A DNA stretch of 64,000 nt from Ophelia neglecta (Eukaryota): NCBI GenBank assembly GCA_965285935.1, contig OZ260661.1:112034001-112098000 (forward strand). The letters are read 5' to 3'. Of the stretch, positions 17,601-57,898 are shown piece by piece; positions within the stretch are counted from its first letter, which is position 1; every line of letters starts with the position of its first letter. The notes under the pieces were generated by a model. The model was not told where the DNA came from. It saw nothing but the letters and a program-made list of their open reading frames with translations, and made no database searches. Position numbers and translations under genes: made by a program.

Positions 17601-20600
17601 CCACCCAGACAGATATCATAGACCAGCTGGATCACAAGCAACAGCAGATGGCGATGTACATCCAGGAAAAGCAAAGTCAAGTGCCCCTTTCCCAACATGA
17701 GCGTGATCCTCCTATTGGGGCCGCATACAGCGATGATGCCATTCAGATAGGTGCCAAAGGTTATTCCAAGCCTACCAGGTCCTCCGACTGGCGACATAAA
17801 CGCACTATTTCAGAGTCTGCCGCTCAGGTAAGCGCCTCTACTCCTGGACGTAGGGGATCAAACTCCTCATCACGTGGCACAACCCCTCCTCCACATAGAT
17901 CATCAGCACCTTCCTCCAGAAGCACCACCCCACCTGCCTCAAAGGATGTCAGACCGAAAACATTACCCACAAATACTCAAGGCAAAGTACCCAAGGGGAA
18001 GGAAAAGGGACTGTTTGGAAAACTAAGTCAAAAGATAAAGAGTAGCGCTCTTGCCCAACAGGTGACAGATCGGCTTTACTCCAAGAAAGATGGTTCAAAA
18101 AAGAAAGAACCAAAAGAGAAGAAAGAGAAAACGGTGCAGAAAGGAGAAGAGTCAAAGCCTCGGAAACCACCTGAAGGATTGCACCAAAGGTCACAGTCTG
18201 TTCCACTTTTGAGCAGTCCGTCAGGAATGCAAGTGCCCAGTCCCAGCACCGTGTCCATGCGTGCCATGAGTCCACGTCTTAGACTAAGCAGTAGCAGTTT
18301 GGCCAGTGTACCAGAATCAATTGATGAGTCTGTGGAAGGAGGACACAGACAAAGAGACTTCAGTCCAGATGTTTATCAATCACGAGATATTTCCCCATTT
18401 TCCCCCTCGAGGCCAGAAGGTAGCCCTCATGACTGGGATTTCGGATTTATGCAACCAGATGGGGACGGTAGTATAAATATCCGAGCTAGCCCCCTAAGTA
18501 GCCCCAGTCCATTGGAAGCTGCCCAAAAGTTGGCTCTGATGCAAGGGAATCGTGAAGGGCATTCTCCTATGACCAGTGACAGTGATGGACTTGAAGTGGA
18601 AAAGCTGATGGGTATAAACCAAGGAGCAGTAAGCTCACCTTTGAAAAGATCCAGCCCTGATGGCCATGATGACTCAAACACCAGTCATGTGCTGTCTCCG
18701 AGCCATGTCAACATTCCAAAATCTACTCTCATAAATCAAGATCTTCATTCACATAATGTAGGGCAGCAACAAACCTCCAATACATTCCAGGTGTCAGAGG
18801 ACCAAAGTACCAAGCCAAAAGGCAGGCAGGAAGCTCCATCTCCCAACCCGACCAAAAAGGATGCCAAGCAGTCTCAAGCAAGTTCCAATTCTTCTGGTAA
18901 GACACCTAGTATTGAATCATCAGAAGTCATGAGAAACAGCAGCAGTGGCTTGTTAGCAGACAACAATAGACCAACTGATTCAGCATCTCCAAGTACTAAA
19001 GGTGTACCAGGCGGAGGTAGTCTAAGTGGCTCTACAAGGAGGAGTGTGAGCAGAGAAAGCTTGTCATCTGCTGATGGCAAGTCATCACAGTCAAGCACTG
19101 ACAGTAGAACCAAGTCACGATCAAGTCCAGAAACAAAGGCAAAGGGCCAGAAAGTGGGCAGTAAAACAAAGCTGTCACCCAAGTCTGACCAAAGAAGTAA
19201 GTCTCAAATATCTAGTGGTGCAGAAGGCAGCAGAACTTCTCCCAAACCTAAACCAGGGGTGAAAAGGACACATTCCAAGACGGAGAAGGACAGTAAAATA
19301 TCTCCCCGCCTAGCAAGAGTTCAACCTGCCATAACCAAGCCAAAGAAAATCAAGAAAAAAGAGGGGGATTTATCGGTTGAAATCTACATTCCCAGTCCAG
19401 TCTTGGCCGAGACCAGCCAAGGTGCCTCTTTAGATACAGATCTCAGCAAACTAAGTCCTGACCTCAGTCCTGCTGCTAGGTCTCCACAGAGGAGGTGTTC
19501 AGCGGGATCTGATCACTCCACCCAGTCATTAGATGAGGTCATTTATAATGAAAATGGCACCAAAATTATCCAAAGGGCAAGAAAATGTACCAAAGGGTCA
19601 GAGTCAGATGATCCAGACAAGAAAAAAGTTGTAGAGCAGAGCTTTGTTATATGGAAAACAAAAGAAGGCAGGACCCATTCTCTGGGGGAATCTGAGCCGA
19701 CAACTGCCATTCTGAGTGATGGAGACCAGGAAATGGCTGAAGCTAACAGGAACGAAAACTCTGCAGATTCCATGGAGGAAGGCAGCGGTGGCTACTCGGA
19801 TGACTCTTTGAATGGAGGCAGCAGTGGTAAGAAAACAGCTGATGTGAAAAAGATGCAAGTGGAACAGGCAGTACCAATTGAAGTACTTATCTCTGCTGAC
19901 CCTTTTGATGAGAATATCCCTGAAGATGCAGGGGAGCCAAATGCACCACATAAAGAAGAGCACTTATTTTCAGATGACTCTTTGAATGGGGATAAACAAA
20001 ATACAACTTCCAAACCCAGCTTAGTTTCTGCTGCTCCAGGGGTGGAGTACTCTACAATTGTAGAAACAGAGTTGGATCTTTTGTATCAATCTAACCTTAC
20101 TGATCAGCATGGCTCCAAAATAGCTGGGGAGATGTCTGATATGGTAGTAACTGGCCCTTTGGTGGGAGAAATGGTCGCCCCTGCCAAGTCAATCACCAGT
20201 GGCTTAATGACCTCAGAGAGTGATCTGACAGCCACTGCTGACAGCACAGCCCACAGCAGTACGCTTGCTCCCAGCTCCCAGTCCGAGGTACGGGACAACC
20301 ACCCACGGGGCTGTCCATACGAGGAAGCTGCTAGGTATGCGTAAGTATACACAATTCAAGTCAACTCTATTCTCATTTCTAAAAGAAACTAATAAAATAA
20401 TCCTACATGAAGGAAATCACCTCATTGTAACTTTTTCGGGGTTCTCTAAAATTAAATCTAACATAATCAAACAGACAATAAATTTATTATTACATAATAT
20501 GTAACCTAGCATATATTTCATCCCAGTGGTGCTGATCGGCCAGACAGTGTCAATGCTGTGAGTGCTAAGAAGGCTGGCAAGCGGGTCAGAAGAAGACATA

Positions 20601-23600
20601 CTGTGCCTCAAGAGAGTGCTGTGAGCACCACCGAGTCTGAGGATGTGACCGGGACTCCCTCAGAGGAGGACTCTCTCTCCACAGGTCATTATTCAGTTCT
20701 CTTCACTCTAAACACATGGCAGCTGGAACCTTGATGCAACTATTGTGTCCTCCTAGAATATAAGTTGATGATTAAGTGTATTATTTAATTATAGATTTAT
20801 AGTGGACAGCATATATATATTTAGATCTATTTTTGTCTTCTAAATTTAATAGATTTGAAGTGGCCAGTACATGTTTTCTTTGTATCTTTTTTCTACCTTG
20901 TTTGTAAGTTGATCATTAAATATATTCCAAAAAATGAGATTAAATTGATTTGAAGACACCAGTACATATATTTTACATCTGCTTGGCATATGTGGCAGCA
21001 TTAAACTGTCAGAAGCATTTTTTAAAACATGTCAAATAATTCATTGTTTAACGGCATTATGTTCTCCATTACAGGAGTAGCTAAACCAAAAAATGGATCT
21101 AGGCCAGTATCGGCTACCAAGCGGCGAAGACGAAAACCTCAGAACAGCCTGAGTGGAGAAGCAGCCTTGGCCGCCAGGCCTGCAGACTGCCTCAGTTCTG
21201 AGGAGTGCGTATCATCTGACAACGAGAGTAGTGTGTATTCTGAAGATTCACTCGGCTTCTCCGGAGAATACATCTTAGATCCGGACACCATGCAAGGTAG
21301 CGGGGAGCAAAGTGCCTTAGATTTAAGTCATAGCGGTAAATCCAAAGTGCCAAATTCAGAAATGAGTAGTGCAGACAATGCAACTATGGACAGTGCTGAA
21401 CCCAATATTGTGAGGGATGAGCAATTTACACTTGAAGCAGATGCCAGTCCAAATGTGCCAATTTCAGTCTCTCCCTCTGTGAACATTTATGCACCTAATA
21501 GCACCCCTGTCCAAGGCAAACTTTCGTTATCTGTAAATAAAGTAGAATTATGGAGCAATACAGATGGACTTGGTGATTTAGCCATGAGCAATACATCAGT
21601 TTCGTACAGAGAGGAAGCATCTGTCTTAGAAGACAGTGAGCTAGTGTCCTCTGCACTTGGGGCAAGTCAGGACACTACCAATGCCACCCCTGTGTCAAGG
21701 GCTGTGAAGGCAGCGTCAGGGAGACTCCCACCCAAGTTGACTTTGGGCCGTGTGGTGGTGTGGGACAATACAGCCAGTCTGCACCGCCAGGCTCTACACA
21801 CTGACAGCTTCTCTACGCCAGGCTCTGGGCAGCAGCCTGATGTAGAGATAGCTGAACAGGGTGCTCTTGTGAAAGATGTGGACTTCACATCTGCTACTAT
21901 CAATGTGGACACTTATGTGCCGAATTCTTTGGGTGCGGAGGGTGCACCAATAGACAATTCTTTCCCTGCTAGATCAGGGGAACCTCCTGTAAATAGTGGA
22001 CTTGCCATGCAATCTCCTGGAAATATAATTGATGTACATATAAATGCTTCAAATCAAAGTGCTAGTGAACTGACTGATTCAAATAGGCTTCCATTGGATA
22101 TTAACCATGAGAATACCCAAGGAGAACAGTCAGACTTGAATGAACAATCTTTATCCCCTATCCCCGGGATAGCAGCTGATTCCTACGTTAGTCCCTCAAA
22201 GGGGCTTGAAGGTTCAACAGAAAGCAGCATGAACAATGCCAAGGTAGATTCACTTGGACCAACCTATGTTGAACCTGCTGAGGGACATGGTGAACAGGTA
22301 TTTCCAATACCAAAAGAAGGTGGTGATACTATTACCATAGTGACTGTCAATAATAAAACTAAACAGGTGGATGTGCAAAAGACTGATGTGATTAAGGACA
22401 GAGTGCACTACATACCTACAAATACTGATGAGACATTACAGACCCCCACAATGTCTGCCAGCCAGTCAGCCACTTCTAGCCCAGTGACTGTAGTGATAGG
22501 CGGTCACGACCCACAAAACAAACCTCCATCGAGGGAGGAAGCTGGCACTACTAACCAGGAACTGATTCTGATAGTCTCCAAGGAAAAGTCGGTTACATCA
22601 ATTGAGTCTAAAGCCGTGCCCAGAGCTCAGCAGACGTACCAGTTTCAAGTGCCAGCAGCTCTGGCGGAGTCTAGCCCAGAACCTGAGCATGTACAATGTG
22701 AACAGGTAGAAAGTGACACACACACCGATGTTGAAAAAACAAACACATCTGCAAACAAATGGAATGAATATAATGAATTGTCAGCCCTGCAAACAAGTGG
22801 GAATCTACAACAAATTCCATTATCCACTGGGCATGTGAATTCTGAAGACCAACCACTACAGAACAGAGAAAATGAAGTGAAAAGGGAGGCTGAAGTTTAC
22901 TCAGTTAGTAAACCAAGCCAGGACCATTCATCAGTCAAAACAACCCATGATGAGAGGCAGACTCAAGTGGCAGCTGCAAAAACTACTGAGCTAAGTGCAG
23001 ATTACTACTTGCCAAATAGCACTAGTAATACAGTAGTATTGAAGGCAAGAGAGCCAAGTTATAGTCTAAGTGGCCAATCGATCGATACCTTAGAGGAAAC
23101 GGAACATGTAGACACTTATCAGGTACTTGACAAACCCACAGAGCGTGACCAAGACATGCCTGTCACAGAGCTGACAAGGGGAAAGACTGGGCCTGAGAAA
23201 CTCACAGACTTGGTCAAATCAGAAACCGTACTTGGTGATAAAAGTCAAGATGGCATTAATAAAACAGCTGAATTTTCACTCAAGAGTGAAGTAAGCTTCT
23301 CACCAGACATTTCACATACTACAGATTCTGTAATTGGCCAAATTCAGGTTGATAAAGATCATAAAACAAGGGAGCAACCTAAACAATGCAATGTACAAGT
23401 GGAAAACATTGAAGGCATTCCCTACAGAGTCGGTACCATGTCTGGGGACAGGAAAGCTTCCCACAAAAGTAACAGAGATTCTGGTTACTACAGTGTGTCA
23501 AGCCCACCCACAAATTTGGAAGCCCCCTTATCTAGCCCCAGTGAATCTGATGAAGACCACTTACAGCTGAGTGATGGGGCTTTTGTTGGAGAAACTGGCC

Positions 23601-26600
23601 CAGATACACTTCACAAGGCTTCATTGATAGGCTCACCTGAGATTAAAGCAGACTGTACTATCCAAAACATGGAAGTTGATGTAAGTAGTCAACAGGGGGT
23701 GCCACATGCAAAGCAAACTGGTGTAGACAGTGCTACAACAGTCAGCTTTTATGGTGGAAGTGATAGCAGGGGCATTAGCCTCCCAGGATTACCATCCTGG
23801 AATTCAACACAACCATTTTCCAAGTCCCTAACACCTGAAGTGAGTATTTGCGATAACACAGTGGAAAATTCAAAAGTCATTGAAAGCCAGTCACTTGTTG
23901 GATTAAGCGCAAATATTGAGGAATACAAGCCTGGACAGGCTCAGCCCATTGAGATTGCTTATAGATCAAATAGTGCTTTTGAACATGAATTGGATCATGC
24001 ATTGACAGGAACATTGAACACCAATACAAAGGATAATAGAACTGACTTACAAAGTACACGATACCAAACTACCGCCGAAATACCTGGCCAGCAGCCAGCC
24101 TTGGTAGAGCAGTGTTATGACAGGCCTAGTCAGGATTTAGTGGAAGTTATTGGACTTGGATCAGAACACGAGCAGACTAATACACCTGACAAAAAGAGTG
24201 ACATTATTCAACATGGTGATTTACAAGATTTAAATTCAAACCGGGTGCCAGAGAACGTATCAGATTTCACTGGAACTTCATTGGAGACTGCTCCAATTCA
24301 GACAAAAGGCAGTCCTGATCTGCTGCAGGCAAATCAAACTTTTTCCACATTAACTGCTACTCGGCAACTTTCACCCGAGATATGTGACTTTACCTCAGAG
24401 GAGTTATCAAGGGATCACCCATTGACAGGCTCAGCACATATACAACAGGGGCCTATAATTCATGTTGACTCTTATACTGATCAATATGTGCAAAGTACTG
24501 ATAGGGACATACTGTGTGAAGAATATAATCCTGATAAGCCAGCCGATAGAGCAGCTAATACACAAACAGGCTTACCTACCTTAGAATTACCTGGCAATAT
24601 CAGTGATCTACACAGACAGCAGTCAACCTTTGATGACACTCTTTCAAATACAGACAGTACTGAAGCTACTAGTTTCTCTGATGAGAGTTTGGTGACAGTC
24701 ATAGATAGGAGGAGACTAGATGCTAGTGGACACAGGGGCAGCGCCAGCTCCCAATCCCTCAGTGACTTTGGCAGCACAACTTCCTTGGATAAGATCAGGA
24801 ATCAAGAGACTTTGTCATCCGAAGCCCTTAACAGCGGTGCAGTACCCACCGAACATGACTTAACAGATGTCCATTCTAGTAACTCCAGCCAAGGACCTCA
24901 ACCCCAGACTACTATTACTACTACTACTGACAACACAAGCCTCAACTCAGATTCAACAAGTCCTTTGAAAGGCTACTGCATTGATATTAATGTGTTAGCC
25001 CACTCGGCTGTGTTAGCAGAAAATATATGTGCTGCTGCAATCAGTGAAGTTTCACAAAGACAGGCCAGTGCAACTAGTGAGAAAAAACAGAATGATATTT
25101 CAGGAAATGTAGAAAATGACAATGTTTCTATCTCTGAAATTCCCATTGAGAAGAAAATAGACAAATATATTTCCGAAGACAGAATTTCAACCAGGGTACT
25201 GTCCCAGTCTCTTTTATTGGCTGATGATATAGTCAATAATGCCATCAATGATGCGGGACAAATAAACAGGCAGAGTGCTGACAGAAAAGATGCAGAGCAC
25301 ATATCAGTAAGCCCAGAGAGAGTTTGTTGGTATACTGAGGACTCCGGTAGTAACAACGAGTGTGCTGTTGGAGAACAGGATATCAGTGACTATCAGGCAC
25401 TATTGGAAGGCAATACAGTAAATGACAGTCAGCTTCCTGACGATTCACCGGAAACATCAACCGTAGGATATAATGAAGAAGAAACACCTATAAGTCAGGG
25501 GGATCACTTGGGTGAAGAAAACACCAATGTTGAAGCAATTGGCAGTGACAGTACCTCACTAGAGATGGCTCAGAAGTATAAAGTGGTAGTCGATGTGGAT
25601 GACATGAAGCCACCCTTGTCACCAGAACAGGAAATAGACACAAATATTGATCTGGATAAAGAAAACGCTTCTCTTTTTGCAAAAGCTGTACCCCAAGACA
25701 CTCAAATTGCATATGATGGTGGTATAAATGAACCCTTCTCAGAGGGAGGTAATGTCATGGATATTGACCTTGATGTCGTCCCAGGGAACTCTGAAGGAAC
25801 ATTGAAAAGAGCTAGGTATGAAATGGACTCTGATGGTTCTCTATCTTCGACCGAAGATTTGAAATCATCAGGGGTTAAATATGTCAGAGTCAATGATCGA
25901 TCTGATGAGCAGGTGAAATCAGCTGGTGGAACTAAAACTGAAGAAGAAAGTGTATCAGTTGACCAAACTGTTCCTTCTGATGAGCAAACTATGGAAACTC
26001 TACAGTCATGTCCGGAATCAGATAGTTTCTATACACCAGAAGCAAGACATTTATCCAGCCCTGATGAAAGTATTGAAGATATTAAAGTAGAACAAGTTGA
26101 AGAGAACCTTCCTATAGAAGGGGTGCATTCCCAGCGTGCCAATGAAATTACACCAAATCCTTCCACTGAGTCCCTACCCCTGGAAACATCAATGTCAGCC
26201 GGCACTCCACACCCTAGTCACCACTCCTCTCCCCAGGCTCACTCCACACCAAGGGACCTTGGTCACCAGGGAGCCAGACCAGAGACAAAGAGTGAATCAT
26301 CTCTACTCAGTGATAGTTTAGATGAGGGCTACTTGACCATGGGTATTAGACTGAGCAGTGCTGACACAACTCTTAATGAATCAGAGGCCTCAGAAAGTGA
26401 CAACACTCCGGCCGTAGAATTACAGGATGGAACAACAAATGAACATCAACAACTAGCAACCATTGATCAGTCTGACCAAAATCCACAGAATGCAGAGAAC
26501 ACTCAAAATGGAAATCTGCCAGAAAATCAAGAACTAGCATCATCCTTCCCTGCTAGTGGATTGGCTTCTAATGTTACCTTTCAACAAAATATCAATGCAG

Positions 26601-29600
26601 ACATTAATATACCTGAACAAGTGAGAGGACTTATGAGTGGAGAACTAAATACCCAATCCACATCATCAATAGATCCAGAAATAGCTGATATTGTTTCTTC
26701 ACAAAACCTCTTTACTGATTTTAGTCAAAATCAACAGTTCGAAGAGGATATGCACGATAAACCAACTGCCCAGTCAACAACAACGTCTGCACTTGACTCA
26801 ACATTTGGCACATCGGCTTCCTCAAAATCAGATTCTCAAACCCCAAAAGGGCCTACCACCGACAAGAGTGGTCCAGGAAACAGTGGTGGAAAAGGTGGAT
26901 CTAATGGTGGCAAAGATGGCAGTGAAAATAAAGAACAAACAGGCAGAGAAGATGATGAAGCTTTTGTTTTTGGAATTGAAACAACCGCACCAGGATCCGA
27001 CAAACTTTCATCTACTGTCCCTTCAACAGAATGTATGCTTGATGAAAACAATGAAGATATTGGAACATCTTCCAATGTCAGCACTCTCGGGGACTATTCT
27101 CAACAACACAGCACTCCATCAGCAAGCGAATCATCATCTGAGGAGGAAGACATTGTGCAGGAAGCTAAAATACCTTCTAGAAATGAAGATAAACATGCTA
27201 CTGCCTCGACCCTTGTTAAATCTGCACTCAACTTAGTGCCAGTCCATAAAGAAGACCAATCACTCTTTGAAGGAGGAAGTGATTCCAGTGTCACTGATTC
27301 TCGGGGCGAAGACCCAGGGAGATATGATTTGGTACATTTTAAGGCACCTGAACCAAGGAAGATTTCAGGCAGCACTAATAGTGGTCAAGAACAGAAGGTT
27401 AAGGATCTTGATAAATCCAACCTTGTTTTGATGGAAGATGGAGATTTTGAAAGAATGGAATATGAGATTGAAGAAATGGGCACCACATATGCCACAATGA
27501 AGAGTAGTGATGAAGGTGGTGGAGAAACCAAGCTTACACTGAAACAAACAATAAGCCAAGCTGAAGCTCAAGTCATGACAAATGACCCGGACCATTCTGA
27601 TTCATCACATACAACTGGAAGAGGGGTGAAGAGGAACCTATCTACTGCTGCTCAGGTAGGTGATAATCTTGAAGATATTACAGAAGATGATATTAAAACT
27701 CTACGAGAAGCTGGTCTGGAAGTGGTACCAAATCCAGTTGAAGTTTCTGATAGCAGTGAGGAAATGCATGCAATTCAAGATGAGAATGTGACACAAATTC
27801 TAACACAAGAGGAAGTCATGAGTCTTGCAGAGATAGGAATGAAAGTTAAAACTAAGAAACAAAAAGTTGCTCATGCACTAAGTGGCAACCATGCAGATTC
27901 AACACAGGTTGTGTTAGAAAACCAAGATAAACCAGTATTAGACAAAATTGACAGTCCATCTGTGAATGTTTGCCATCAGGGAGATCAAAATATTGACCAG
28001 TTAGATCAAGAACTGGCAGGAGAGAAACCAGAAGATGAAAAAGATGAACAACTGGCTTATGACTCTGTACAAAACCAAGACCAAACACCTGTCTTTAACA
28101 GAATTGACAGTTCATCATCAATGCTTGTGAATGTCGGCGATCCCGGAGAACAAAACATTGAACAAATAGATGAAGAACTCATAGGAGATCTGGTAGAAAA
28201 TGAAGAAACAGAAACTGGTGAATCACTGCTTGAGGTCTCTGTACAAACCCAAGACCAAAAATCTGTCTTAGAAAGAATGGACAGTCCCTCAGCAGTGCCT
28301 GTGAATGTTGGCAATCAGGGACAACAAAACGTTGGACAGATAGATGAAGAACTGGCAGGACAGCCACCGGAAAATAAAGAAGAATCTGAGAAACCACTGG
28401 ACAAGGTCCCTGTACAAAACCAAACACTTGTCTTAGACAATATGGACAGTCCCTCATCAATGCCTGTGAATGTTGGCAATCAGGGACAACAAAACATTGG
28501 ACAGATAGATGAAGAACTGGCAGGACAGCCACTGGAAAATAAAGAAGAATCTGAGAAACCACTGGACAAGGTCCCTGTACAAAACCAAACACTTGTCTTA
28601 GACAATATGGACAGTCCCTCATCAATGCCTGTGAATGTTGGCAATCAGGGACAACAAAACATTGGACAGATAGATGAAGAACTGGCAGGACAGCCACTGG
28701 AAAATAAAGAAGAATCTGAGAAACCACTGGACAAGGTCCCTGTACAAAACCAAACACTTGTCTTAGACAATATGGACAGTCCCTCATCAATGCCTGTGAA
28801 TGTTGGCAATCAGGGACAACAAAACATTGGACAGATAGATGAAGAACTGGCAGGACAGCCACTGGAAAATAAAGAAGAATCTGAGAAACCACTGGACAAG
28901 GTCCCTGTACAAAACCAAACACTTGTCTTAGACAATATGGACAGTCCCTCAGCAGTGCCTGTGAATGTTGGCGATCAAGGACAACAAAACATTGGACAGA
29001 TAGATGAAGAACTGGCAGGAGAGCCACCGGAAAATAAAGAAGAATCTGAGAAACCACTGGCTAAGGTCCCTGTACATAACCAAACAGTTGTATTAGACAA
29101 AATGGACAGTCCCTCAGCAATGCTTGTGAATGTTGGTGATCAGGGAGAACAAAACATAGACCAGGTAGAGGAAGAACTCACAGGAGAGAAACCTGAAATT
29201 AGAGAAGAAGCTAAGGACCCTCTGGCTAAGGTCCCTGTACAAAACAAAGACCAAAAACCTATCTTCGATGGAAATGATAGTTCTTCGTCAATGCCTGTGA
29301 ATGTTGGCCATCAGGGAGAACAAAATATTGACCAGTTAGATAAAGAACTGGCAGCAGAGAAACCAGAAAATGAAAAAGATGAACAACTGGCTGATGACTC
29401 AGTACAAAACCAAGACCAAAAACCTGTCTTTAACAGAATTGACAGTTCATCATCAATGCTTGTGAATGTCGGCGATCCCGGAGAACAAAACATTGAACAA
29501 ATAGATGAAGAACTCATAGGAGATCTGGTAGAAAATGAAGAAACAGAAACTGGTGAATCACTGCTTGAGGTCTCTGTACAAAACCAAGACCAAAAATCTG

Positions 29601-32600
29601 TCTTAGAAAGAATGGACAGTCCCTCAGCAGCGACTGTGAATGTTGGCGATCAGGAAGAACAAAACATTAACCTTGCTGACAAAGAACAACCCCTAGATGA
29701 TATAGCTGAAAATGATAAAACTGAGAAACCATTGGCTGATGCCTCTGTAGGAAGCCATGCCCAAAAACTTAACTTAAACAGAATTGACAGTTCCTCATCC
29801 ATGCTTGTGCATGTCGGCGACCACAGAGAACAAAATATTGATGAAGAACTCCTAGGAGAGCTACCAGACCATGAAGAAGAAACTGATGAACCACTAGCAA
29901 AAGCTTTTGTTCAGGCAGACAGGCTCATGCAAAGTGGTCTTTCACCGTTCAGCCCCGAAGCTATAGAAATTGCAGAGCAGAAGGCCGCTCAATTTGCCAT
30001 GGAAGAACAAGAAGCAAGATTGTCAAGATCAAGCGAAGGGTCCGTAAAAGAGGACCTGTCAAGACTTGAAGTGAAAGTTAATGACATTGTGTCTGATCTT
30101 GCCAATGCTGCTGAGCAATACAGGATCAATAGCTGCAGCAGACGTAAGACCCCAAGTACTGGCAGTGGAGCTGGTGTGAATGAAGGAAATGACAATGAAA
30201 TATCTGTATTTGAAGAGAAGCGCAGTCCATATGGTCTGCCTGGGACCAATTCAACAGCAGCTACAATGGGAGATGGTGAAACAGTTGAAGAAATAACTGA
30301 AGAAGACATACTGTTGCTGGAAGAGGTTGGCTTGGAGTTGGTTGACTCCATTGGGTTGGTTACCGCAAGTGAACCACCAGAATCTGAAACTGTTACAGGG
30401 GTTGGAGACAAGGAAGAACTCACCAGGAGAAACTCATTAATAGCCTCCGATAATGACCAGTTTGACAAACCGGAAGGTAATGCAGAAAATGACATTGCTC
30501 TCCAAGATGATGAACTAAAGGAATCTGATAGTACACCTGCTTCCCAAAACACAACATTTCATCAGAAACCTGATATCAATGAGCTACCAACTCCACCCAA
30601 GGAAAGAGAATCAGCTGTGGGTGCTGATCATCCAGAGTTTGACCCCATGAGAGCTAACACTCAAAGCCCTTCTCTCATTGTTAATGTGGATGACAACGAG
30701 ACATGCAGTCTTACAAGTCAGGAAGTCCTGGACATGAAAGATGAAGAGAGTTTACCGACACATTCAGATCTTCCAAAACAGGATGGCACCAAAACAAAGG
30801 CTGCCTCTTGGCTAATTGATTCTGAACTCCCTCATCAAAAGCAGGCCTCCATCAGTGAACACTTTGAAACACCTGGTCGAGAAACAGACCAACTGGAAAG
30901 TGTCAATAGGCCTGGTGAAGAAGATATGGCACTAACATCACAAATACCACAGAGTCCTTCCATGCTTATGAATGTTGATGATCAGGAAGCATTAAGTCTC
31001 ACTGAAGAAGACATTGAAGACTTAAAAGCCAAAGGCATTGAAGTTGATTTGTACAGCAATAAGTTTGAGCAACGCATTGAACAAGATAACCACTCGGACC
31101 AGAGTTCTGTATACTCTGAAGAACCTGAGTATGTGCCAGGGAGAATTCCATCACTAGTCATCCAACCACCTTCCTCAGAGTCAGAAAATGATCTTTGCAG
31201 TGGGGTGTCATCCCCAGAAAATGATAGAGAGCAAGAGGAAAATGAATGGCCTACAAGACTGATGGAAGATGATGAAGAAAATTTACACCGAGTGGGTCAT
31301 AGTGTTACCGAATCACCAAAAGGCACACTACTAAAGAATTACTCTATGGATGTCAACATTGGAGATGTAGATGACCAATATATATCAGACGAGGAAATTG
31401 ATTTGATGCAAGCCACTAATTTCCCTGCAGCTGATAACCTCAGCGATGATGCCAGCGCTGAAGAATCTGAACAGAACATGGAAATGAAAGAAGGCATGGA
31501 TTTTGATGCAGGCGTTTCTAAATCTACACCAAAAGGGGAAGATACTCTCGGAAGACATGAAGAAACCATCATTGATCCTATTAATGAAATTACACTAGGT
31601 CAGAGCTCTGATGAGCAGTTAAAGTTTGGAGAGTCAGCTACTTATCTGAATGAGGAGGAGGGAAAGAAATTATTCCCTGCATCAAGTGAAGATGATGAAA
31701 GAGCTTCACATGTCAGTGAACAGAAAAAGGGAGAACTCCATGGAAACCAACAACAATCTGCCAGAACAGATGATAGAAGACCACAAAAAGTGACCGGGAA
31801 CAGCTTGCAAGATCAAGAAAGTGGTAAACCTCCAATAGAAGCAGACTTAGTATCAAAGGTCAGTGATGATGTGACCTCTCTCAATGACCTGACAGACGGT
31901 TCCAAACCAACCCCTGAAGAAGAGAATACTCAAGTTGTTGATGATACAGCTAGGGATAACAGGGACAACTCATTCATTAAAGACAAGGGGGTGGAACACC
32001 AGACAAAAGATAAATTCACTGTTTCAGAGAGCGGAAGTCCTTTGTGTGAGAAAAATGGCACCAATTCTTCTTCAGCAGGACAGCTCCAGCTGGATACTAC
32101 AGACATCTCTGTTAAGCAGGTTAGCCTGGTTGAGGCCAACAGGGAATCAGTCACTGATTTAGAAGGGCCTGAGGCTTCTGTCAGTGACATAGGTAATGCC
32201 ATTTCACTCATGAAGAAATTTGGCCTGGATACTGTTCCTAGTGACTTGTCCTCTTTACAAGCAGTTCAAGGGGATCAATTTCAATTGATCCAAGCAGCAA
32301 CACTCTTGAGGAATGTAGGACTAACAACACTGCCAGAAGTCACTAACATTGAAGAAGACACACAATTTGTGGAACCAATGAACACATTCGAAGACAATAA
32401 CTTAGATAAGCAGCAGCATCAGGATTTTGGCACCATTCCTGAAATTGATACCACACACACTCATGTAAGTCAGCTGCCATCAGCAGCAGCCAGTACAGTT
32501 GACGACAGTGTGAGAGCGGACGCTTTGGGAGGTGACCCTAGTAATTCATCCGTAGGATCACAGAGTACTTATACCTCACCCCTGGTCAGGAGGCAACTGG

Positions 32601-35600
32601 ATGACTTGGAAGATTTACCTCAAGTTGGTGGGGAGGGCATTGTTAATCAGGTATTAGACAACAATATCCCAATTGATATTGGTGAAGTGGAAAACAGGCA
32701 GTCTGTATCTCAAACTGACACTGCCACAGTTCTAGAAAATCAAGGAGAACGGCTCACTCAAGTTCCAGGTGTTGCTAGCCTAGGTGATCGTATTATATCA
32801 ATGGCTGAAGAGACAATACTGGACAGAGTCAAAGAATCTGGTATCACAGCTATATCGCCTGATAAGGTTGATAATATCAGACAAGTGGAACTTGGGGAGC
32901 AGGTGGAAGTTCCAACTGGTGGAGGAATGGATTTTGATGCAAATTCAATAGTGGAAGAACAATGTGAACAAAATTTGGAAGAGGTGAGGTCAGATAAGAT
33001 AATTGAAAAATCTGAAAACCCGGTGCAGCCTAATTACAGTTCCCTCCTGAATCAAACAGAGTCTGGTTATTATTCTGTTAATATCTCTGAAATTGAAAAT
33101 CAATCAGCAGCAGAGTTAGCCAACGATAGTCCAGCAAAGGAAGAAGATGTGCATTTGGAATTTATTGACCAGGCTAAGGTAAGGTCAGTAGAAGAGCTAA
33201 CCGATCCATTTCCTATAACAGATGAAAGGCAAAATGACGAAGGCCAGGACCAGTTCAGGGACAAAACTTACATGGAAATAGAGAACCAACAATACACTCC
33301 TGAAATTCCAGAAGAGATGAATTATAACCAGTCTGTTCAGCATAACCAATTGGACTACACTCCTGATGATAGCCAGCTTCTAAAGGATGGCTCGTATGTG
33401 CCCCTAAGAGAAGATAGTGAGATAGACCCAAGCTTAACACTAAGAAGGGATGAGCCTCATGAAGATTACCCTGATCAACCAAACCGAGACTTCATGGACT
33501 GGACAGCTCCATCAAGTCCACAGCGAAATACACATGTACAGCTGGATGTTGACATAACAACCAAAGACAAGCAAACTACACCAAGATCAGAAGCCAGAGA
33601 AGAAAGTCAACTAAAGTATAAGCCTCAGTACATTAGCACAGAACAACAATCCTTGTATGACTCTGCTTTTAATTCAGACTACACAACCGATGCAGAGGCT
33701 ACCACTGATTTTACTGACACAGAAATGCTGTCACCAAGAAGTCCTACACACCGTGACTACCCTTCTCAAGCTGTTGATTTTGACACCCAGGGAGAAGGAG
33801 AGGAAGAAGAGGTGAATCAAATGGGTGAACTTTTGACACATCAAGATGCAGATGGGGACAAAAAAGATGCTGCAACCATCATCAGTGACACGGCACAATT
33901 GCAGCTTAAAGATCTGGCTACAGCCAATCAGATCTACAGTACAGTAAGTGCAGAAAATGAAGAAGACCAGTCGAACAAGGTTGATGATACCAGGCACAGC
34001 CATGTTCCAGAGAATGTACCAACTGTTGTTGAATATGATAATGGGGTAACAATAGAAAAAGTACCATCCATTGAAGATATGAAAGAAGAGGGTGTTACAG
34101 ATGAAGAGAACAAGTATTTTCTGAAGAATAATGAAGACATTGATGATGCTGCTTCTGGTGAGGAACCATTATATGGAAATGCTGATGACAAAGAGGTAAC
34201 TGTGGGCCATAGTTTGGAAGAACGCAGTGTGCCCCAAACACCTAACATGCCATCAGAAGGGGAGCCAGCTGAACTCAGTTGTAGTCTTGTGATCACAGAA
34301 GTGCCTGAACAGGGAGCTACTGGTTCTGGGGCTGAGAGTCCAGGGACACAATTGCCAATTAAGTCTGTGCTAAGAACTGAAGATTCCTGTCGAAGCAAGA
34401 CAAGCAGTCAAAAGAAGGTTCGATTTATGGACACTCAAATTGTTGGGTTTGATGTTACACCAGACAAAGCCATGGCTAGAGACACTGAAGAAGGATCAGA
34501 AGATGACTTGCATGAAGTTATTTTAGGAAGTAAATCAACTGTGACAACTACCACAGATAAAGTTAAATTGGCTTCTGATATGCAAGTACTTGGGCTCCAG
34601 CCTGCTGGTACACAAAAGGCCCAAATGAGACCTGGTGGACCTGAAGAAGTTCTCAGAGAAGAACCTACATCACCAGCTCATAGCAAACTGAGACATGCAG
34701 CACTCAACATTGAAATCAAGCCATGGGAGAAAAAATCAGTACCTATTCAAGTACAAAAGCCAGAGCAGGTACCATCAGAGGCAAAGCTTAGTGTCTTTGA
34801 CCATGATGACACTTTGGTAGGGTTGCGTAAAGGCAGAGCACCTTTGGCATCAACTGAGACCCTGGGCTCTTCAACTGATGAGATTCACAGAGTTTCCGAT
34901 GATATTGTCATCAGCGAAAGAATCAGAGAGCTGGATGAATTGGAAGAGAGCCCACTGCAGACACCATCACCAGATGGCAGTCAATCTCCCCAAACCACTC
35001 CCGGGTCCTCACCACGACTAGCTACTGAGGGGAAGGAGGGACCATCTGCCAAGAGAGGGATCCAGGTTAAAGTGGCCGAAACAGTAACAAACATTGATCG
35101 CCAAGCCATTGTGAAAAAATCGTCAAGTGACTCTGGTATTTCTGCAAACCCGGCCTCTTCTATAAATCAAGATAGTGCAGTCATTCCACAAACTGATGAA
35201 CAAGGAGATGATCTGGGCATGGAAGTTACTCAACAGTTGGCTGATTTTGATGACCAACTTATGAGATCTGAACATATGGTTAGTGAAGGGTGGGAAAATG
35301 AAGAGCCATCCCATTATGGCTCTGGACAAACAGCCACCCCTGACAAAGACACTAGGGAAGGTCCTATTGAAGAGGGTCCTGATGTATTAGAAGTTACACC
35401 AGAAGAGAACTCTGAACCCAGTGATGTCCAGATGTACTTTGAAACAGAAATACCCAATGCTACCATCACAGAAGTATATCAAAGTAATTCAGAAGATGCT
35501 GCATCCCAAGTCCACGACAACACACCTTTATCTTATTTACATGATGACTATGATAACTCTCTGACTGCTGAGAAAGTACATACACAAACAGACAAACCTC

Positions 35601-38600
35601 CATCTTCCAGTGTGCAAAGCCAGATTTTCAAGGTCCAGGAACAAGACATTCAAAGTGAAGAACCATCCATGGAGGATGTTACAGAGGATTCACAGTCTAT
35701 TCCAAAGTCAGGTATTCCTGGGGCCTCAGGACAAGAAGTGGAGTCTCTTCATTTGAAAGGAATGGAAGAACAACCTGTTGTTTTTGTAGAAGGTGGAGAG
35801 ATTCAGCCAGTGTCAGGAGAACTGCCTGAAGAAACAGAACCATTCGTTTCCAGAGAAAACTACAGTGTTTCTGATGAAGGTCAAGCAAAACGGCTGCTCG
35901 ACGATCTTAAGGAGGTTAAACAAGATTCTGATGAAATTCAAAGACAGCCAGATGAACTGGACATGAGAGAAGAATTCCGCGATCAGGATGAAATGGAGAG
36001 CAGGCCACCTTCATTACCTGGAAGTCAATCCTCACCAACCACTCCCAGGTCCTCTCCACCACCATCCACTGAGATGAATTTGGGACCATCTGGCAAGGAA
36101 GGGATGCACGTTGAAGGGGCCAAACCTGTAACAAGCATTGATCACCAAGACATCTTGAAAAAATCATCAAGTGACTCTGGTATATCTGCTGACCAGGCCT
36201 CTTCTTTACATCAAGATAGCACAGTCATTACAAAAGCTGATGAACAAGGGGATGGTCAGGGCATTGAAGTTACTCAACAGGTGGCCGATATTGATGACCA
36301 ACATTCAATGCCAGAACAACTGGTAAGTGAGGGATGGGAAAACGAACAGCCGTGCCAAGATGTCTCTGGACTGATGGTCACGCCTGTCAAAGGTATAAAT
36401 GTACTTGTTGAGGAGGGCACAGGTGCATTGGAAATTACACATAAAGAGAACTCTGATAACAATTATGTCCAGATGGATATTGTAAAAGGTGACTTCAAAG
36501 AAGGTTGCTTCAAATCACAAAGACTTTATATGACCAGCACAGAAGATGGCCACATTCATGGTACCTCCCGGGAGAATGCCACACATTTAGACCAAGACAA
36601 CACACATTCATCTTCTGTATGTGATGACAAAATAACTTCAGGAACATATGGGGAAGGACATGTGCAAATGGATTTACCTGCAGACTCCAGTGTGAGAAGC
36701 CAGACAGACAAGATCCAAGAAGAAGGTGATAGTGGAGAAGGGCTGTCTATCGAGGATATTCAAGAGGGTTCATCTGGAGAAGAGACAGTTCCTCAGCATC
36801 ATAAAGTGGAGCCTACACCTTTGACAGTAATGGAAGAAAAACCTTCTGTTTTTGCTGAAGGTGAGGCGGTTCACCCTGTGTCAGTGAAACTATCTGGAGA
36901 AACAGAACTAGTTAGGTCAAGAGGAAGTTTCAGTTTGTCTGATGAAGTTGAACAAAAGCAACTCCTGGAATATCCTGAGAAGAGTACACAAGAAAGAGAA
37001 CAAGAATTAAGACAGACTCATGACAAACCATACAAAGATGAAGAACCTGCTCTTCCTAAAGGAAATGTGGCAGTGAGTGAAGATTTCATTAATATGCTTG
37101 ATAGGCAAGAACATCTCAAAACTATCAGTGATGATGTTCATGATACAAGACAAGAGTGTCTTTTGGCCATGTCGCCCAGTGATATTCATGGCGATGAGTC
37201 CAAAGGGTTGGCAGAAGATCAACTGGGGGTAGACACAGGAAAAGGTCACACTGAAATAACTGGCATAGAAAATCAACTAGATACAGAAGACCAAATCAGA
37301 ACCACTAAAACATTTGATAGCACCAAAAATGACCAGGACCAACTTGCCAATGAGAAGGGTAATGTCCAGGAAATAAGATTGGATGGATCTCCTGACATGA
37401 CAACCGAAGGCAGAACAGAAGATATATTTGAGAACAACCAAGAACAGCAGCTATTTGTAGAGAGTGACAAAGAGTGCCATGATGCTGTCTTGCCTAGTAG
37501 TACTCATGAGCTGGAGTCTGAAATATTGTCTGGACATCCACAGGCAGCACTTAGAAATGTTCACATTGTGCCCACTAGTTTAGAAACCCAACCAGATATT
37601 GGTGACGAAATTACAACCACAAAGCTCTTAGATGAACTTGAGCATGAAAGACACCAACATGGAAGCCAGATGATTGTTGTTCAAGAAACAGAAGTGGATG
37701 ATGGCAAGCAAAGTGGAAAGCTGAACAATCTGGAAGAAACCACTCCAATGCCAACTGCTGAAATTTCGAGAAGAGACCAGCTAGCTCCAGAGGAGAGAAC
37801 TTTAGTTAAGGCAGATAATCAGAGAAAAGAAAATGAAGAGTCAGAGCAAAATCAGGACCAGCATTCTCCTGAACCTTGTGATGAAGAAATCACTGTTGAT
37901 GGTGGAGTTCCAGAATCAGAGATAGCTTTTGATTCAGCTCAGAGTCCAGAAAGTGAACAGCAGAAAAACATGAATGAAATTATAGGACCAGAAGATAACA
38001 TGTCACAATTTGTTCCAACAAACTTTGACCAAGCAAATGATAACAATGATGTTGAATACCTTGTGGAAGACCTACTTGATGCCACAGAAGAATTCCTGAC
38101 AGATGGTATTGTTGACCAGTGCATAGAAGAAGTTGAGGGCAATGTAGTTTTCACTGATGACAGTTTTAATGAAGGCGAGATGTCAGATATGGCCTCTCAG
38201 GAAGCTAAATCGCTTAAGCCATTACCAACAGATCAAATTGATCATCCTGATGAGACCCTGGAATATCAGGACAGTGTCAGCAAGGATACTGATGACCACT
38301 TAAGTGGTGGTCCTGTTGACCTCCCCCATAAAGAAGCTGATTTCAAGGTGTCTGAAGTAGACACTGGTCTGCCTAGTATTGAAGTTCACTCTGGTGAACT
38401 AGTTACTGACAGCAGTCATGGTGATAAGAGCCGATTGACTCATGATGTCACAGGCAAAGAACATGAATCAATGGAAGGTGGTGAAAACAACTCAAAGGTT
38501 GATTCTATAAATGATGAAACTGGGACAAGTCTTTATGATCCAGTAAGTTTAGAGTCTACCGAACAGGGAGGCAGGTTGAAGAAGGGGGTATCTGATAACA

Positions 38601-41600
38601 TCAAGGAAAGTGATGCGGGGAGAGAAAATCAAGACTTTGCCAACAGTACTGCAACACATGACCACTTAAGCCCTGTGGACTCAACTTTAATAAAATCTGA
38701 TCTTCACAATTCGGAAACAGAAATTTTTGTGCCAAGCGTAAATGCTGAGATACTTGCCACTGATACCCTACAATGTATTGATGCAGAATTAAAACAACAT
38801 GAACTGATGGAAATTGATGAAAACAGCTCAACACAGACTGGAGGTGAAAATGACTTGCCAAGCCTATATGATCAACGAATTATACCTGAAGGAAAACAGC
38901 AATCAAATGAGATGGGAACTGATCAAATTGGCCCCAGTAATTTGAATGAAGAAGCTGTTGAAATGCCAAAACCAGGAACTGGTCTGCCAGGCATTGAAGC
39001 TAGCACTGGCTTAATAACCATTGACATCCAGTCAACAGATAAGGACCACTTGACCAGTGATATTCATGTTCAAGACCCTTCAGTAATGGAAGATGATGAA
39101 AGCAGGCCCAGTGGGCACCCTAGAGATGAAGGTAGTGAGACATTCTTCGAAGAGTCCTCCCTGGGCGTACCAGAGGAAGAGTTGCCAATGATAGCTCAAG
39201 AACATTATGCAGACCTTGTAACACCAACAGATAAGGAAGATGGGCTGAGGGTTATGACAACATCAGAGCCAAGCAGCAAATCAGAAATTACATGCACTGA
39301 TAATAATAATAAAGACCCAATCATGTCCAAGGCTGAGTCAGATGATTGGGAGCCATCAGAACGGCAGCAAGTTGTAGATGATAATCTTAGCCAGCAAATA
39401 TCAGACAAAGAGCAGATGAATACCGATGAAACCTATAATGAGACTTCAGGCCAAGCAACAGCAAATAACCAAATGCTTGAGAAGTTACCAGGACCATCTG
39501 GGAACCAAGCATCTCCTGAAAAGTACCCAGCAGATGCTGATAAGATGGAGGCTGATATTTTAAATAGAGAACCAGATGAGATGATAGCTGAAAAATTGCC
39601 ATTAACACAGGAGGCAAAAGAGAAAGCTGAAGATCTGGCTGATTTTACAGAAAATGTTTATGGCATGTTACAAACTCTGGATGATCTGACCTCTTCTGAT
39701 GAGCATGAAGGACAAATTACATTAGGACAGATGGAAGATTCTTCCTCAGTGTATCCTAGCATGCCTTCAGAGATCCCTGATATCATGGATGAAGATGATG
39801 ACGAGAGATTGATGGCAATTATAGCCGAACTTGATCAAGCACGAGGCACTTTGAGGGGTGGCTCACCAGTACCAGAGCTCAGTATTTCACTTACTTCATC
39901 TGAAAGCTTGGAAGACTATGAAGCAGAAATGGCAAAGGAAAGGCTTAATGCTAGTCACAACATGACTCAGAGTGAAGCAGATATAGTAGGAAGCCAGGGG
40001 GAATTATTTGAGGGATTGATGCCATCTTTTCAAGATTTGCCAGATGCTGGAGGTTCGCTTGAGAAACATCTTAAAAACTCTTCTTCAGATTTTCAAAACA
40101 GGCAATTAAGCAATGATGAATTGGAAATTGGCCTGCCAAGACAGTTGAGATCTACTCCTAAAAGGAAACTGAAAATGAAGCGACCAGCTCCACTGAGAGC
40201 CAAAAGGCAAATATCTTACAGTGATGGTTCCTCATCAGATGAAGAGACTACCAGTCCGGTCAGCCCTGGAGAGGTAAGAAGGCAGCGAGAGTTGCTCAAT
40301 AGAGACAGATGCCTCACTGTTACAGACTCAGACATTGACTCCAGTGACATTGCTGAGCAGATTGCTCAGCTGCCAGAGATAGTCAACCCTCGTGTCTGCC
40401 GGGAGAGAGAGAACTGGATGGTCAGACACCAGCGCTGGCAGCGCTGCCTTTCCCAGTCAGAGCTGGAGTACCCGGCCCCTGGGGTGTGGGCCAGATGTAA
40501 GTCCATGTCAGCAGACTGTGTTGACCTCTTTGATGAGATAGCTCAGAGAACTTTGTCAAGTGACAGCATCACCTATGTGTTTGTCAGTCAGACCCGCAGC
40601 CTGGATAGACTTATGGCAGACGAGAATGACAGGAGCCAGTACAACACCATGATCAGACCAACATCTGAACCCTCATGGGCTGAAAATGAGCCTCTCAGAC
40701 ATAAATATGGTAAGATCATCTTCATGCTACAAACAGTACGAATCTCCTTTATTAAGTTTATCTACATGTATCCTGTTGGTAATGCTAGACTATTAAATTT
40801 ATTGTTTTCTTTGATACAGGTATCGATGAAGATGTCTTGCCTCTAACATTCAGATCAGCTTCGGCTGAGGTTCTTCCTGAATGTTCCCAGGGTGGAATTG
40901 ATGTGACTGCTGAACGTATTATACTCAAACGATCCCAATCTCTTGATGACAAATTTCTGTCGAAGGAAAACAATGTGGGGAGCGAGGAAGAGGTGAACTT
41001 GGACAATGTGTTTGGAGGGTATTTGGGAGAAGGTCAGCCCTGGGAGGAGACCACAGAAGCAGTCTCAGAGTCCAGAACAGCAAAAAGGGCACCTGGAGAG
41101 AGAAAGGAAAAGAACGGTTGCTGGGTTGTGGACAGTGACGACACACTTTGTGATGGAGAAGAGCCTGGTACTCCCAATACAGCCAGAACACCAAGACCTG
41201 GCCTACTGCCACAGACAGACTACACAGAAATGGGCATCCAGACAACAGCCTCCCTGGAGGAGCTGTATATGGGGGTCAAGGTGTTAGGGCAAGATCCCAT
41301 CACCCCAGGCACTGCTCACAGTCAGCTAAATACAGGCAGATTGGTGGATTCCGCTGTAGGCACTGATGTTGAATCTCTTAAATTTGCTGAAACAAACACT
41401 CCTAGTTCACCCTTAACCTCAGCCATACAGACCCCACAGAACACAAGTAAGGACTCATCCCAGAAACAGCTGGTCAGTGAATCACCAAGAACATCAATTG
41501 ACATGTCAAGTGGTACCAGTGATTTGCTAAAACGAGCCTTAGCCACAGTGCGAAAGGCAATGAGTTCACAAACAGAGTTATCGTCAGTAGCCTACATAAA

Positions 41601-52118: not shown

Positions 52119-57898
<5,780 letters not shown>

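What the first reader, a model, noticed from the sequence alone, without database searches (positions are those of the whole stretch)
21075..40709. 19.6-kb single coding exon that is frame-symmetric and so skippable
Seen: 19,635 bp (3 x 6,545) with no stop, bounded by phase-1 splice sites on both sides, so joining 20684 to 40820 keeps the frame. Established: this is longer than titin's largest exon (about 17 kb), and giant ankyrins use one huge alternatively spliced disordered exon to make neuronal isoforms. Inference: the gene may switch between a normal form and a >1 MDa form with a 6,500-aa acidic spacer.
Basis: partly seen in the sequence, partly recalled or inferred. Interest (0 to 1): 0.85.

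Follow-up and report, generated by a model that had tools for sequence, protein, structure and literature searches.

The report
Giant 19.6-kb exon of a kinesin
The 19,635-base exon is real and is kept with the same borders in a sister species; it encodes a 6,545-residue acidic, probably floppy middle part of a roughly 10,600-residue kinesin motor protein of a mollusc/annelid-type animal, but nothing yet shows that it is ever skipped.

Summary
Observation confirmed. Window 21075-40709 (+) is 19,635 nt (3 x 6,545) with no stop. It has an AG acceptor, a GTAAGA donor and phase 1 on both sides, so joining 20684 to 40820 keeps the frame.

It codes throughout. A codon model trained on the neighbouring exons is positive in 99.9% of 60-codon windows. 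The other five frames hold 203-783 stops each.

A sister-species contig has the same exon with the same borders and phases, at 20,559 nt. More distant spiralians also have 10-20-kb open frames in this gene, but they lack the 3' intron:
- Owenia fusiformis;
- two related contigs (probably haplotypes) of one unnamed assembly.

The gene is single-copy. Upstream on the same strand lie a complete kinesin-3 motor with a long Ser-rich loop 12, as in STARD9, and FHA-type exons. The protein ends in a conserved basic tail with no START domain. The summed model is about 10,600 aa (about 1.15 MDa).

The product of the exon is uniformly acidic (net charge -799), has no Pfam domain, and its best-conserved block is predicted to be disordered.

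The comparative evidence leans towards inclusion. At 19.6 kb the exon is longer than titin's largest exon but shorter than human MUC16 exon 3.

Verdict: a new member of a known kind, of moderate interest. Another first-reader note on this same window had already proposed the STARD9 resemblance.

The parts
21075..40709 (+). Giant coding exon G: 19,635 nt, 6,545 codons, phase 1/1. It encodes an acidic Ser/Glu/Asp-rich chain with net charge -799.
   Evidence: The orthologous exon of 20,559 nt in the sister species has the same borders.
20527..20684 (+). Exon B: 158 nt, phase 2 to 1. Its donor GTCATT is weak; the sister species has GTCAGT.
17178..20334 (+). Exon A: about 1,052 codons, phase 1 to 2, Ser/Lys-rich with no net charge. 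An alternative in-frame donor lies 6 nt downstream, at 20340|GTAAGT.
   Evidence: Orthologue P0044 is 48% identical over the full length.
15984..16204 (+). Charged coiled-coil-like exon (Glu/Arg/Lys-rich), ending in phase 1.
   Evidence: The sister species has a counterpart at L021:4176-4475.
40820..46778 (+). Exon N: 5,959 nt, phase 1 to 2. It follows the 110-nt intron. Its C-terminal ~300 residues are conserved across Spiralia.
46980..47076 (+). Small conserved exon: 97 nt, phase 2 to 0. It is needed to keep the frame between exon N and the next exon.
   Evidence: 76% aa identity to the sister species.
48010..48113 (+). Exon S: 104 nt, phase 0 to 2.
48450..49101 (+). Last coding exon: a basic Thr/Ser/Arg-rich tail ending KRKF plus a stop. 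There is no START domain.
   Evidence: The same C-terminus and stop are present in the sister species.
28076..29668 (+). In-frame tandem array inside exon G: 165 nt (55 aa) x ~9.5 copies. At protein level the array spans aa 2277-2951.
39773..40708 (+). The best-conserved block of exon G (last 312 aa). It contains the motif W..R...WQ..LS.SELEY ... DSITY. It is predicted to be disordered.

Best explanation
This is a genuine single internal coding exon of 19,635 nt. It belongs to a single-copy gene for a giant kinesin-3 of a spiralian (mollusc/annelid-type) animal.

Shown:
- The exon codes along its whole length.
- A sister species keeps its borders, phases and open frame (20,559 nt there), although about 40% of the residues no longer align.
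- All downstream exons fit one frame, to a conserved stop.
- On the same strand upstream lie a complete kinesin-3 motor with a long Ser-rich loop 12, a neck, and FHA-type exons.

Inferred:
- The motor and the giant exon are in one transcript, giving a protein of about 10,600 residues (about 1.15 MDa).
- The exon encodes a polyanionic, intrinsically disordered tether of 6,545 residues. It sits between the motor/FHA/coiled-coil head and a C-terminal coiled-coil plus basic tail.
- Selection keeps the frame, the length and the acidic composition. It keeps the sequence itself only in a few short islands, which serve as docking or regulatory motifs.
- The exon grew partly by internal tandem duplication.
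- It is most likely included in the main product. Whether it is also skipped is unknown.
For: Exon and frame.

Sister species (contig ERZ25069296:ctg21496, loci L020/L021):
- Exon A orthologue P0044, 48% identical.
- Exon B with the same ending.
- Acceptor tatag|GC and donor ATG|GTAAGT at the same codons.
- Exon length 20,559 = 3 x 6,853.
- A 118-nt intron, then the exon N orthologue P0010.
- HMMER aligns about 57% of the exon colinearly with the orthologue.

Composition is conserved: net charge -12.2 per 100 aa here and -13.3 in the sister species.

No Pfam domain is found in any large exon. The AF2 model of the best-conserved 203 aa has mean pLDDT 48 and almost no secondary structure.

Motor and FHA:
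- Kinesin Pfam hits on upstream exons.
- The motor motifs beta1, P-loop, switch I, switch II and neck are all present.
- The best PDB matches are kinesin-3 members.
- The last FHA exon matches the KIF1A FHA domain.
- Loop 12 is about 48 aa and Ser-rich, against ~15 aa in KIF1A from my memory of its sequence, not measured here. This compares with the insertion reported as unique to STARD9 (PMC4310736).

The gene is single-copy in the genome. Internal duplications. The frame-consistent exon chain to a conserved stop.
Against: So single-exon usage, linkage to the motor, and inclusion level are all inferred.

No relative's annotated protein contains a kinesin domain. About 28 kb separates the last FHA exon from the coiled-coil exon, so a motor-less transcript from an internal promoter is possible.

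Disorder is inferred from composition, the lack of domain hits, and one shallow-alignment AF2 model.

Orthology to vertebrate STARD9 was not tested by a tree, and the C-terminal START domain is absent.
Confidence: 0.62

Rival explanations
1. One reading: the exon is a regulated cassette. Skipping (20684 joined to 40820) gives a kinesin of about 4,050 residues, and inclusion gives one of about 10,600 residues. Splicing would then set the length of the tether, perhaps tissue by tissue.
For: The phase 1/1 symmetry is real and is kept in the sister species. It is the only one of the six in-window internal exons with both phases determined that is symmetric. The donor of the upstream exon B is weak in both species, GTCATT and GTCAGT. 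In humans, large internal exons are alternatively spliced more often than small ones, and only ~40-45% look constitutive (PMC3467050). The skipped product would be close in size to vertebrate STARD9 at 4,700 aa.
Against: Symmetry is expected by chance in about 1 of 3 exons. The most conserved element of the entire disordered region lies at the 3' end of this exon and would be lost. In Owenia and in the ERZ25069859 lineage the 3' intron is absent, so the cassette is not ancient. No junction read or isoform was seen, because RNA data could not be reached.
Confidence: 0.27
2. The giant exon belongs to a separate, motor-less gene or transcript that starts downstream of the kinesin motor and FHA exons. 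On this view the kinesin is an ordinary-sized neighbour.
For: All database relatives are domain-less fragments with no kinesin domain. About 28 kb lies between the FHA exon (window coordinate about -12,060) and the coiled-coil exon at 15984. Another first-reader note proposes an internal promoter at 5160-5640 (not tested).
Against: The exons are on the same strand, and no other gene or terminal exon was recognised in between. A charged coiled coil after the FHA domain is, from memory of KIF16B, the usual kinesin-3 layout; this is a lead, not a test. The database relatives are ORF calls or 'partial' models that could not span introns, so their missing motor says little. The motor has the long Ser-rich loop 12 that otherwise marks the giant kinesin STARD9.
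Confidence: 0.15
3. The open frame is not a functional exon. It would be an assembly artefact, a repeat expansion that happens to stay open, or a decaying pseudogene.
For: About 20% of the exon is detectable internal repeat. Much of it does not align with the sister species.
Against: 6,606 codons have no stop, while the other frames have hundreds. The coding signal is uniform. The same ~20-kb open frame with the same splice sites occurs in an independently assembled sister species. Giant open frames persist in two related contigs (probably haplotypes) that differ in length (6,745 against 6,552 aa) and in Owenia.
Confidence: 0.02

Closest known systems
STARD9 (also called KIF16A), the giant vertebrate kinesin-3
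   Same: Both have an N-terminal kinesin-3 motor followed by FHA. Both have an unusually long Ser-rich insertion in loop 12 of the motor, reported as unique to STARD9 among mammalian kinesins (PMC4310736; here). Both have a multi-thousand-residue domain-free central region encoded in a very long stop-free stretch.
   Different: There is no C-terminal START domain here: the protein ends in a conserved basic tail. It is about 2.3 times longer (about 10,600 against 4,700 aa). The conserved motif of the giant exon found no vertebrate protein in 1.8 billion representatives. Orthology was not tested by phylogeny. PMC4310736 states that STARD9 is not conserved outside the lineage it studied.
Giant exons of ankyrin-B/G (440/480-kDa neuronal isoforms)
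   Same: In both, one very large exon encodes a mostly disordered insert within a cytoskeleton-associated protein (papers listed).
   Different: The ankyrin exons are shown cassettes with tissue-specific inclusion, and they are 6-8 kb (from my own knowledge). Here inclusion or skipping is untested, the exon is 19.6 kb, and the protein is a motor.
Largest known internal exons: human MUC16 exon 3 (>21 kb) and TTN (>17 kb)
   Same: They are in the same size class, and this exon falls between the two (PMC3467050).
   Different: MUC16 is a tandem-repeat mucin domain and the TTN exon encodes folded Ig/Fn3 arrays. This exon is about 80% unique, non-repetitive, acidic sequence with no domain hits.
Uncharacterised spiralian proteins: Owenia fusiformis 'unnamed protein product, partial' (P0015), Elysia chlorotica EGW08_005679 (P0018) and Pomacea canaliculata C0Q70_13486 (P0026)
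   Same: They are homologous to the C-terminal part of exon N (E-values 9e-33 to 2e-14; 29-37% identity). They are acidic and Ser-rich and have no Pfam domain.
   Different: They are fragmentary models. In Owenia the genome holds one open frame of at least 5,060 codons, of which only part is annotated, and it lacks the intron that bounds this exon on its 3' side.

Membership tests
Kinesin-3 family | Kinesin motor domain with P-loop, switch I and switch II, and a kinesin-3-type neck | tested here: met
   PF00225 hits on three upstream exons on the same strand. Motifs found: VAVRIRP, GQSGSGKT, SSRSH, LVDLAG and YRDSVLT..LGGN, plus the neck exon. The best PDB matches are kinesin-3 members: a KIF1C-related protein, KIF13B, KIF14 and KIF1A. 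Linkage to the giant exon is inferred, not shown.
Kinesin-3 family | FHA domain after the neck coiled coil | tested here: inconclusive
   The domain is split over at least 3 exons. The last exon aligns to the end of the KIF1A/KIF1B FHA structures (4ejq, E = 0.017). Pfam FHA gave no hit on the separate exons. The first piece gave no PDB hit.
STARD9 / KIF16A | Long Ser-rich insertion in loop 12 of the motor | tested here: met
   The loop between alpha4 and FIPYRDS is about 48 residues, against ~15 in KIF1A from my memory of its sequence. It is rich in Ser/Thr and contains an NSGSVSS stretch. The feature is described in PMC4310736. The canonical DSGXXS degron itself is not present.
STARD9 / KIF16A | C-terminal START lipid-transfer domain | tested here: not met
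   PF01852 hits in the genome lie only at C7:65.0 Mb and C1:96.5 Mb, about 15 Mb away. The frame-consistent exon chain ends KRKF plus a stop at 49099-49101, the same as in the sister species.
STARD9 / KIF16A | Multi-thousand-residue domain-free central region encoded largely by one giant exon | tested here: met
   Exons A, G and N are 1,052, 6,545 and 1,986 codons, with no Pfam domain.
STARD9 / KIF16A | Orthology of the motor by phylogeny | not tested
   No vertebrate STARD9 or KIF16B sequences were retrievable within the length limits of the search tools. The exons were searched apart, as required.
Alternatively spliced giant cassette exon (ankyrin-type) | Frame-preserving (symmetric) exon | tested here: met
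   Phase 1/1, length 3 x 6,545. The sister species shows the same.
Alternatively spliced giant cassette exon (ankyrin-type) | Transcripts observed both with and without the exon | not testable with these tools

The most novel reading that the evidence does not exclude
The exon is a true splice-controlled switch. The same kinesin-3 gene would make a motor of about 0.45 MDa, or a motor of about 1.15 MDa whose cargo end sits on a 6,545-residue polyanionic tether (contour length of the order of 2 micrometres). The reach of the motor would then be set by alternative splicing. The largest kinesin known would be a spiralian-wide family, so far unannotated and START-less, related to STARD9.
Probability: 0.22. 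Interest if true: 0.7.

Novelty: new member of a known kind. Interest (0 to 1): 0.42.

Why it matters
The exon is among the longest internal coding exons documented in any animal. It falls between titin's and MUC16's, and unlike those it is mostly unique, non-repetitive, acidic sequence.

It shows that spiralian genomes carry a kinesin-3 gene with 10-20-kb open frames, which current annotations reduce to domain-less "hypothetical, partial" fragments. If the model holds, this is the largest kinesin described. It would also extend the STARD9-like design (motor plus an enormous disordered chain) outside vertebrates, without the START domain.

The case is also a clean natural example of selection on frame, length and charge with little selection on sequence. 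That is useful for studying what very long disordered tethers do in motors.

The splice-switch idea, the part that made the finding exciting, remains open and is cheap to test.

Tried and rejected
- Pfam on all large exons gave nothing beyond one sub-threshold chance hit.
- Rfam on the window and 80 kb upstream gave no family.
- ESM Atlas look-up of the exon N C-terminus gave no usable hit.
I reached that contig through P0010 and P0044 instead.
- The look-up of encoding contigs on Pomacea P0026: not on record.
- FHA Pfam search of the genome and of single exons gave no hit near the gene. Only the PDB comparison gave a weak, position-correct match.
- A tblastx search for START-like or other conserved exons downstream, against the ERZ25069859 relative, found none.
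- AKAP lead: an amphipathic helix in exon G (around aa 1375-1393) looked to me like a PKA-RII-binding helix. Pfam gave no RII-binding hit. Complex prediction with this genome's own RII docking domain gave "no answer" (score 0.19 against a mark of 0.34). That is no evidence either way, and I make no binding claim.
- A self-BLAST of the whole exon returned only the identity hit. Chunked BLAST worked.
- dN/dS against the sister species was not attempted. At 33-61% amino-acid identity, synonymous sites are saturated.
- The joined (spliced) protein was not assembled or searched. Exons were searched apart by reference.
- No contig looked human, and no masked stretch was met.
Full report
**1. The observation**

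The window has a stop-free frame from 21026 to 40843, 6,606 codons. The proposed exon borders are exact.
- The acceptor is ttacag|G, so the exon starts at 21075.
- The donor is ATG|GTAAGA, so it ends at 40709.
- After a 110-nt intron, the acceptor is atacag|G, so the next exon starts at 40820.
- The exon is 19,635 nt = 3 x 6,545 and is phase 1 on both sides.
- The upstream exon B (20527-20684) ends with one base of a codon. G+GA gives Gly if the exon is included and G+GT gives Gly if it is skipped, so the frame is kept either way.

This cannot be chance.
- The five other frames of the same DNA hold 203-783 stops.
- Codon positions are strongly asymmetric: 37% G at position 1 and 40% A at position 2.
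- A codon model trained only on the neighbouring exons A and N, against intron and intergenic DNA, is positive in 99.9% of 60-codon windows along the exon. In intergenic control DNA it is positive in 0.1%.
- So there is no intron-like island of 180 nt or more inside the exon.

Only one tandem array was found by Tandem Repeats Finder, 165 nt x 9.5 at 28076-29668. At protein level, about 1,320 of 6,544 residues are detectable internal repeat: a 55-aa array at aa 2277-2951, and a ~345-aa duplication (4601-4942 against 4952-5298). The rest is unique sequence.

**2. The gene around it**

All downstream exons fit one frame:

| Exon | Coordinates | Phase |
|---|---|---|
| Exon N | 40820-46778 | 1 to 2 |
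| Small conserved exon | 46980-47076 | 2 to 0 |
| Exon S | 48010-48113 | 0 to 2 |
| Last exon | 48450-49098 | ends KRKF plus a stop |

Upstream in the window lie a charged coiled-coil exon (15984-16204), exon A (17178-20334, about 1,052 codons) and exon B. The in-window coding exons sum to 9,993 codons.

Further upstream on the same strand I fetched 100 kb. It holds a complete kinesin motor, with these positions in window coordinates:
- the start MSNVKVAVRIRP at about -65,016;
- the P-loop exon at -34,188;
- SSRSH at -29,248;
- switch II at about -25,900 and -25,460;
- YRDSVLT..LGGN at -23,767;
- the neck at -22,740.

The best solved-structure matches of the loop-12/alpha5 exon are kinesin-3 members.

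Exons at about -16,050, -12,900 and -12,250 read like a kinesin-3 FHA domain. The last one aligns with the end of the KIF1A FHA structure (E = 0.017). Pfam did not pick up the fragments.

Loop 12 of the motor is about 48 residues and Ser-rich, against ~15 in KIF1A from my memory of its sequence, not measured here. Such an insertion is reported as unique to STARD9 among mammalian kinesins (PMC4310736).

No START domain lies anywhere near. The conserved stop rules out a START-bearing C-terminus. The conserved blocks occur once in the genome.

With about 600-650 residues for the head, the full product would be about 10,600 residues, or about 1.15 MDa. Without exon G it would be about 4,050 residues. 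Linkage of the motor to the giant exon is inferred from position and strand only.

**3. Relatives**

Searching with the exon found one protein, P0001. It is a 6,832-aa ORF on a 45-kb ENA contig. It matches both ends of the exon and 5-7 colinear blocks at 33-61% identity. HMMER aligns about 57% of the exon.

Through the neighbouring ORFs P0010 and P0044 I fetched that contig as loci L020 and L021. It has:
- the exon A orthologue (48% identity);
- exon B ending ...EEDSLTSG with donor GTCAGT;
- the acceptor tatag|GC at the same codon;
- the donor ATG|GTAAGT at the same codon;
- a 118-nt intron, then the exon N orthologue.

From the record coordinates, the orthologous exon is 20,559 nt = 3 x 6,853. 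So the giant exon, its borders and its phases are conserved in a sister species. Composition is conserved as well: net charge -12.2 and -13.3 per 100 residues.

Deeper relatives tell a different story about the borders.
- A profile-free HMMER scan of 1.8 billion representatives with the last 312 residues gave only six hits. Two of them looked like low-complexity matches, one being a Giardia ankyrin-repeat protein.
- The true relatives share a motif, W..R...WQ..LS.SELEY, followed by DSITY.
- On a 1.25-Mb contig (L016) and a second contig of the same assembly (L018, probably the other haplotype), this motif lies inside a 3,304/3,430-aa ORF. That ORF runs on without an intron into the exon N homologue. 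It is preceded, 7-8 kb upstream, by a 6,745/6,552-aa ORF whose end matches residues ~2042-2100 of this exon.
- In Owenia fusiformis (GCA_903813345.2) one open frame of at least 5,060 codons, running off the fetched locus, holds both the motif and the exon N homologue.

So giant open frames are a family trait across Spiralia, but the 3' intron that makes this exon a separable unit is lineage-specific.

The only named relatives are fragmentary and domain-less: Owenia (annelid), and Elysia and Pomacea (gastropods). From this I infer that the window comes from a spiralian animal.

**4. What the exon encodes**

- Composition: 11% Ser, 11% Glu, 9% Asp. Asp+Glu is 19.9% and Lys+Arg is 7.7%. Net charge is -799, and every 250-residue bin is acidic.
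- No Pfam domain was found.
- The best-conserved 203 residues, folded with their five-sequence alignment, gave mean pLDDT 48 and one short helix. This fits conserved linear motifs in a disordered chain. The shallow alignment limits this conclusion.

My reading is an entropic, polyanionic tether that carries a few docking or regulatory motifs. This is inferred, not shown.

**5. The cassette idea**

Points in favour:
- The symmetry is real, and it is the only one of the six in-window internal exons with both phases determined that is symmetric.
- The upstream donor is weak in both species.
- Large human exons are alternatively spliced more often than small ones, and only ~40-45% look constitutive (PMC3467050).

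Points against:
- Symmetry has a prior of about 1/3.
- The most conserved element of the whole disordered region would be lost on skipping.
- The unit is not separable in Owenia or in the ERZ25069859 lineage.

I put skipping at an appreciable level at roughly one in four.

**6. Comparison with what is known, and novelty**

The closest system is STARD9. It shares the kinesin-3 motor, the FHA domain, the loop-12 insertion and the giant stop-free middle. One defining feature, the START domain, was tested and is not met. So I file this as STARD9-like in design, not as a START-domain family member. Orthology was not tested.

In size the exon lies between TTN (>17 kb) and MUC16 exon 3 (>21 kb).

Another first-reader note on this window (s1-734181) had already proposed the STARD9 resemblance and the basic tail. 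My tests agree with it.

The joined spliced protein was not built or searched, as required. Exons were handled apart by reference.

**Verdict:** a real and well-conserved giant exon in an unannotated giant kinesin, a new member of a known kind. The splice-switch reading remains open.

Noticed in passing
window 25199-25255 (exon G aa ~1375-1393); P0001 aa ~1326-1345 and ~1521-1540: A conserved amphipathic helix motif, LSQS(L/V)(L/V)LA(D/E)(D/N)I(V/I)..AI. It occurs once here and twice in the sister species. From memory it resembles PKA-RII-binding (AKAP) helices. Pfam gave no hit and the complex test gave no verdict.
   Followed up: partly
L010:4723-6375 (window coordinates about -15,277 to -13,625; intron between FHA exons): A long minisatellite that stays open in one frame for ~550 codons. 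It reads as a 20-residue unit (PPGIGHSHVLPQGEIPIHPQ) repeated many times. It is probably intronic repeat DNA rather than an exon.
   Followed up: no
L016 and L018 (assembly ERZ25069859): Two contigs of one assembly, probably haplotypes, carry the homologous gene with giant ORFs of different length: 6,745 against 6,552 aa, and 3,304 against 3,430 aa. All are intact, so the length variation is in-frame.
   Followed up: partly
L019 (Owenia fusiformis GCA_903813345.2, CAIIXF020000008.1:24481793-24513154, reversed): An open frame of at least 5,060 codons runs off the start of the locus. The public model (P0015, 2,308 aa, 'partial') begins about 10 kb into it. The annotation of this gene is clearly incomplete.
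   Followed up: partly
L025:1465-2574 (G000:C8, around 43,909,277): An intronless 370-codon open frame encodes a complete PKA type-II regulatory subunit, with the docking domain and two cNMP-binding domains. It exists besides a separate RII docking-domain exon on C1 (L022). It may be a retrogene.
   Followed up: no
window 46980-47076: A 97-nt exon, 76% identical at protein level to the sister species, that an ORF scan overlooks. Without it the frame between exon N and the next exon breaks.
   Followed up: yes
flank, window coordinates about -77,500 to -68,500 (L004-L005): The upstream neighbour on the same strand is a multi-exon gene of long charged coiled coils. It ends ~3.5 kb before the start of the kinesin. 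I did not identify it.
   Followed up: no
window 51996-52976 (+): A 326-codon ORF downstream of the gene with a weak coding score. It has no obvious relation to the kinesin and may be a repeat or an antisense reading of something.
   Followed up: no
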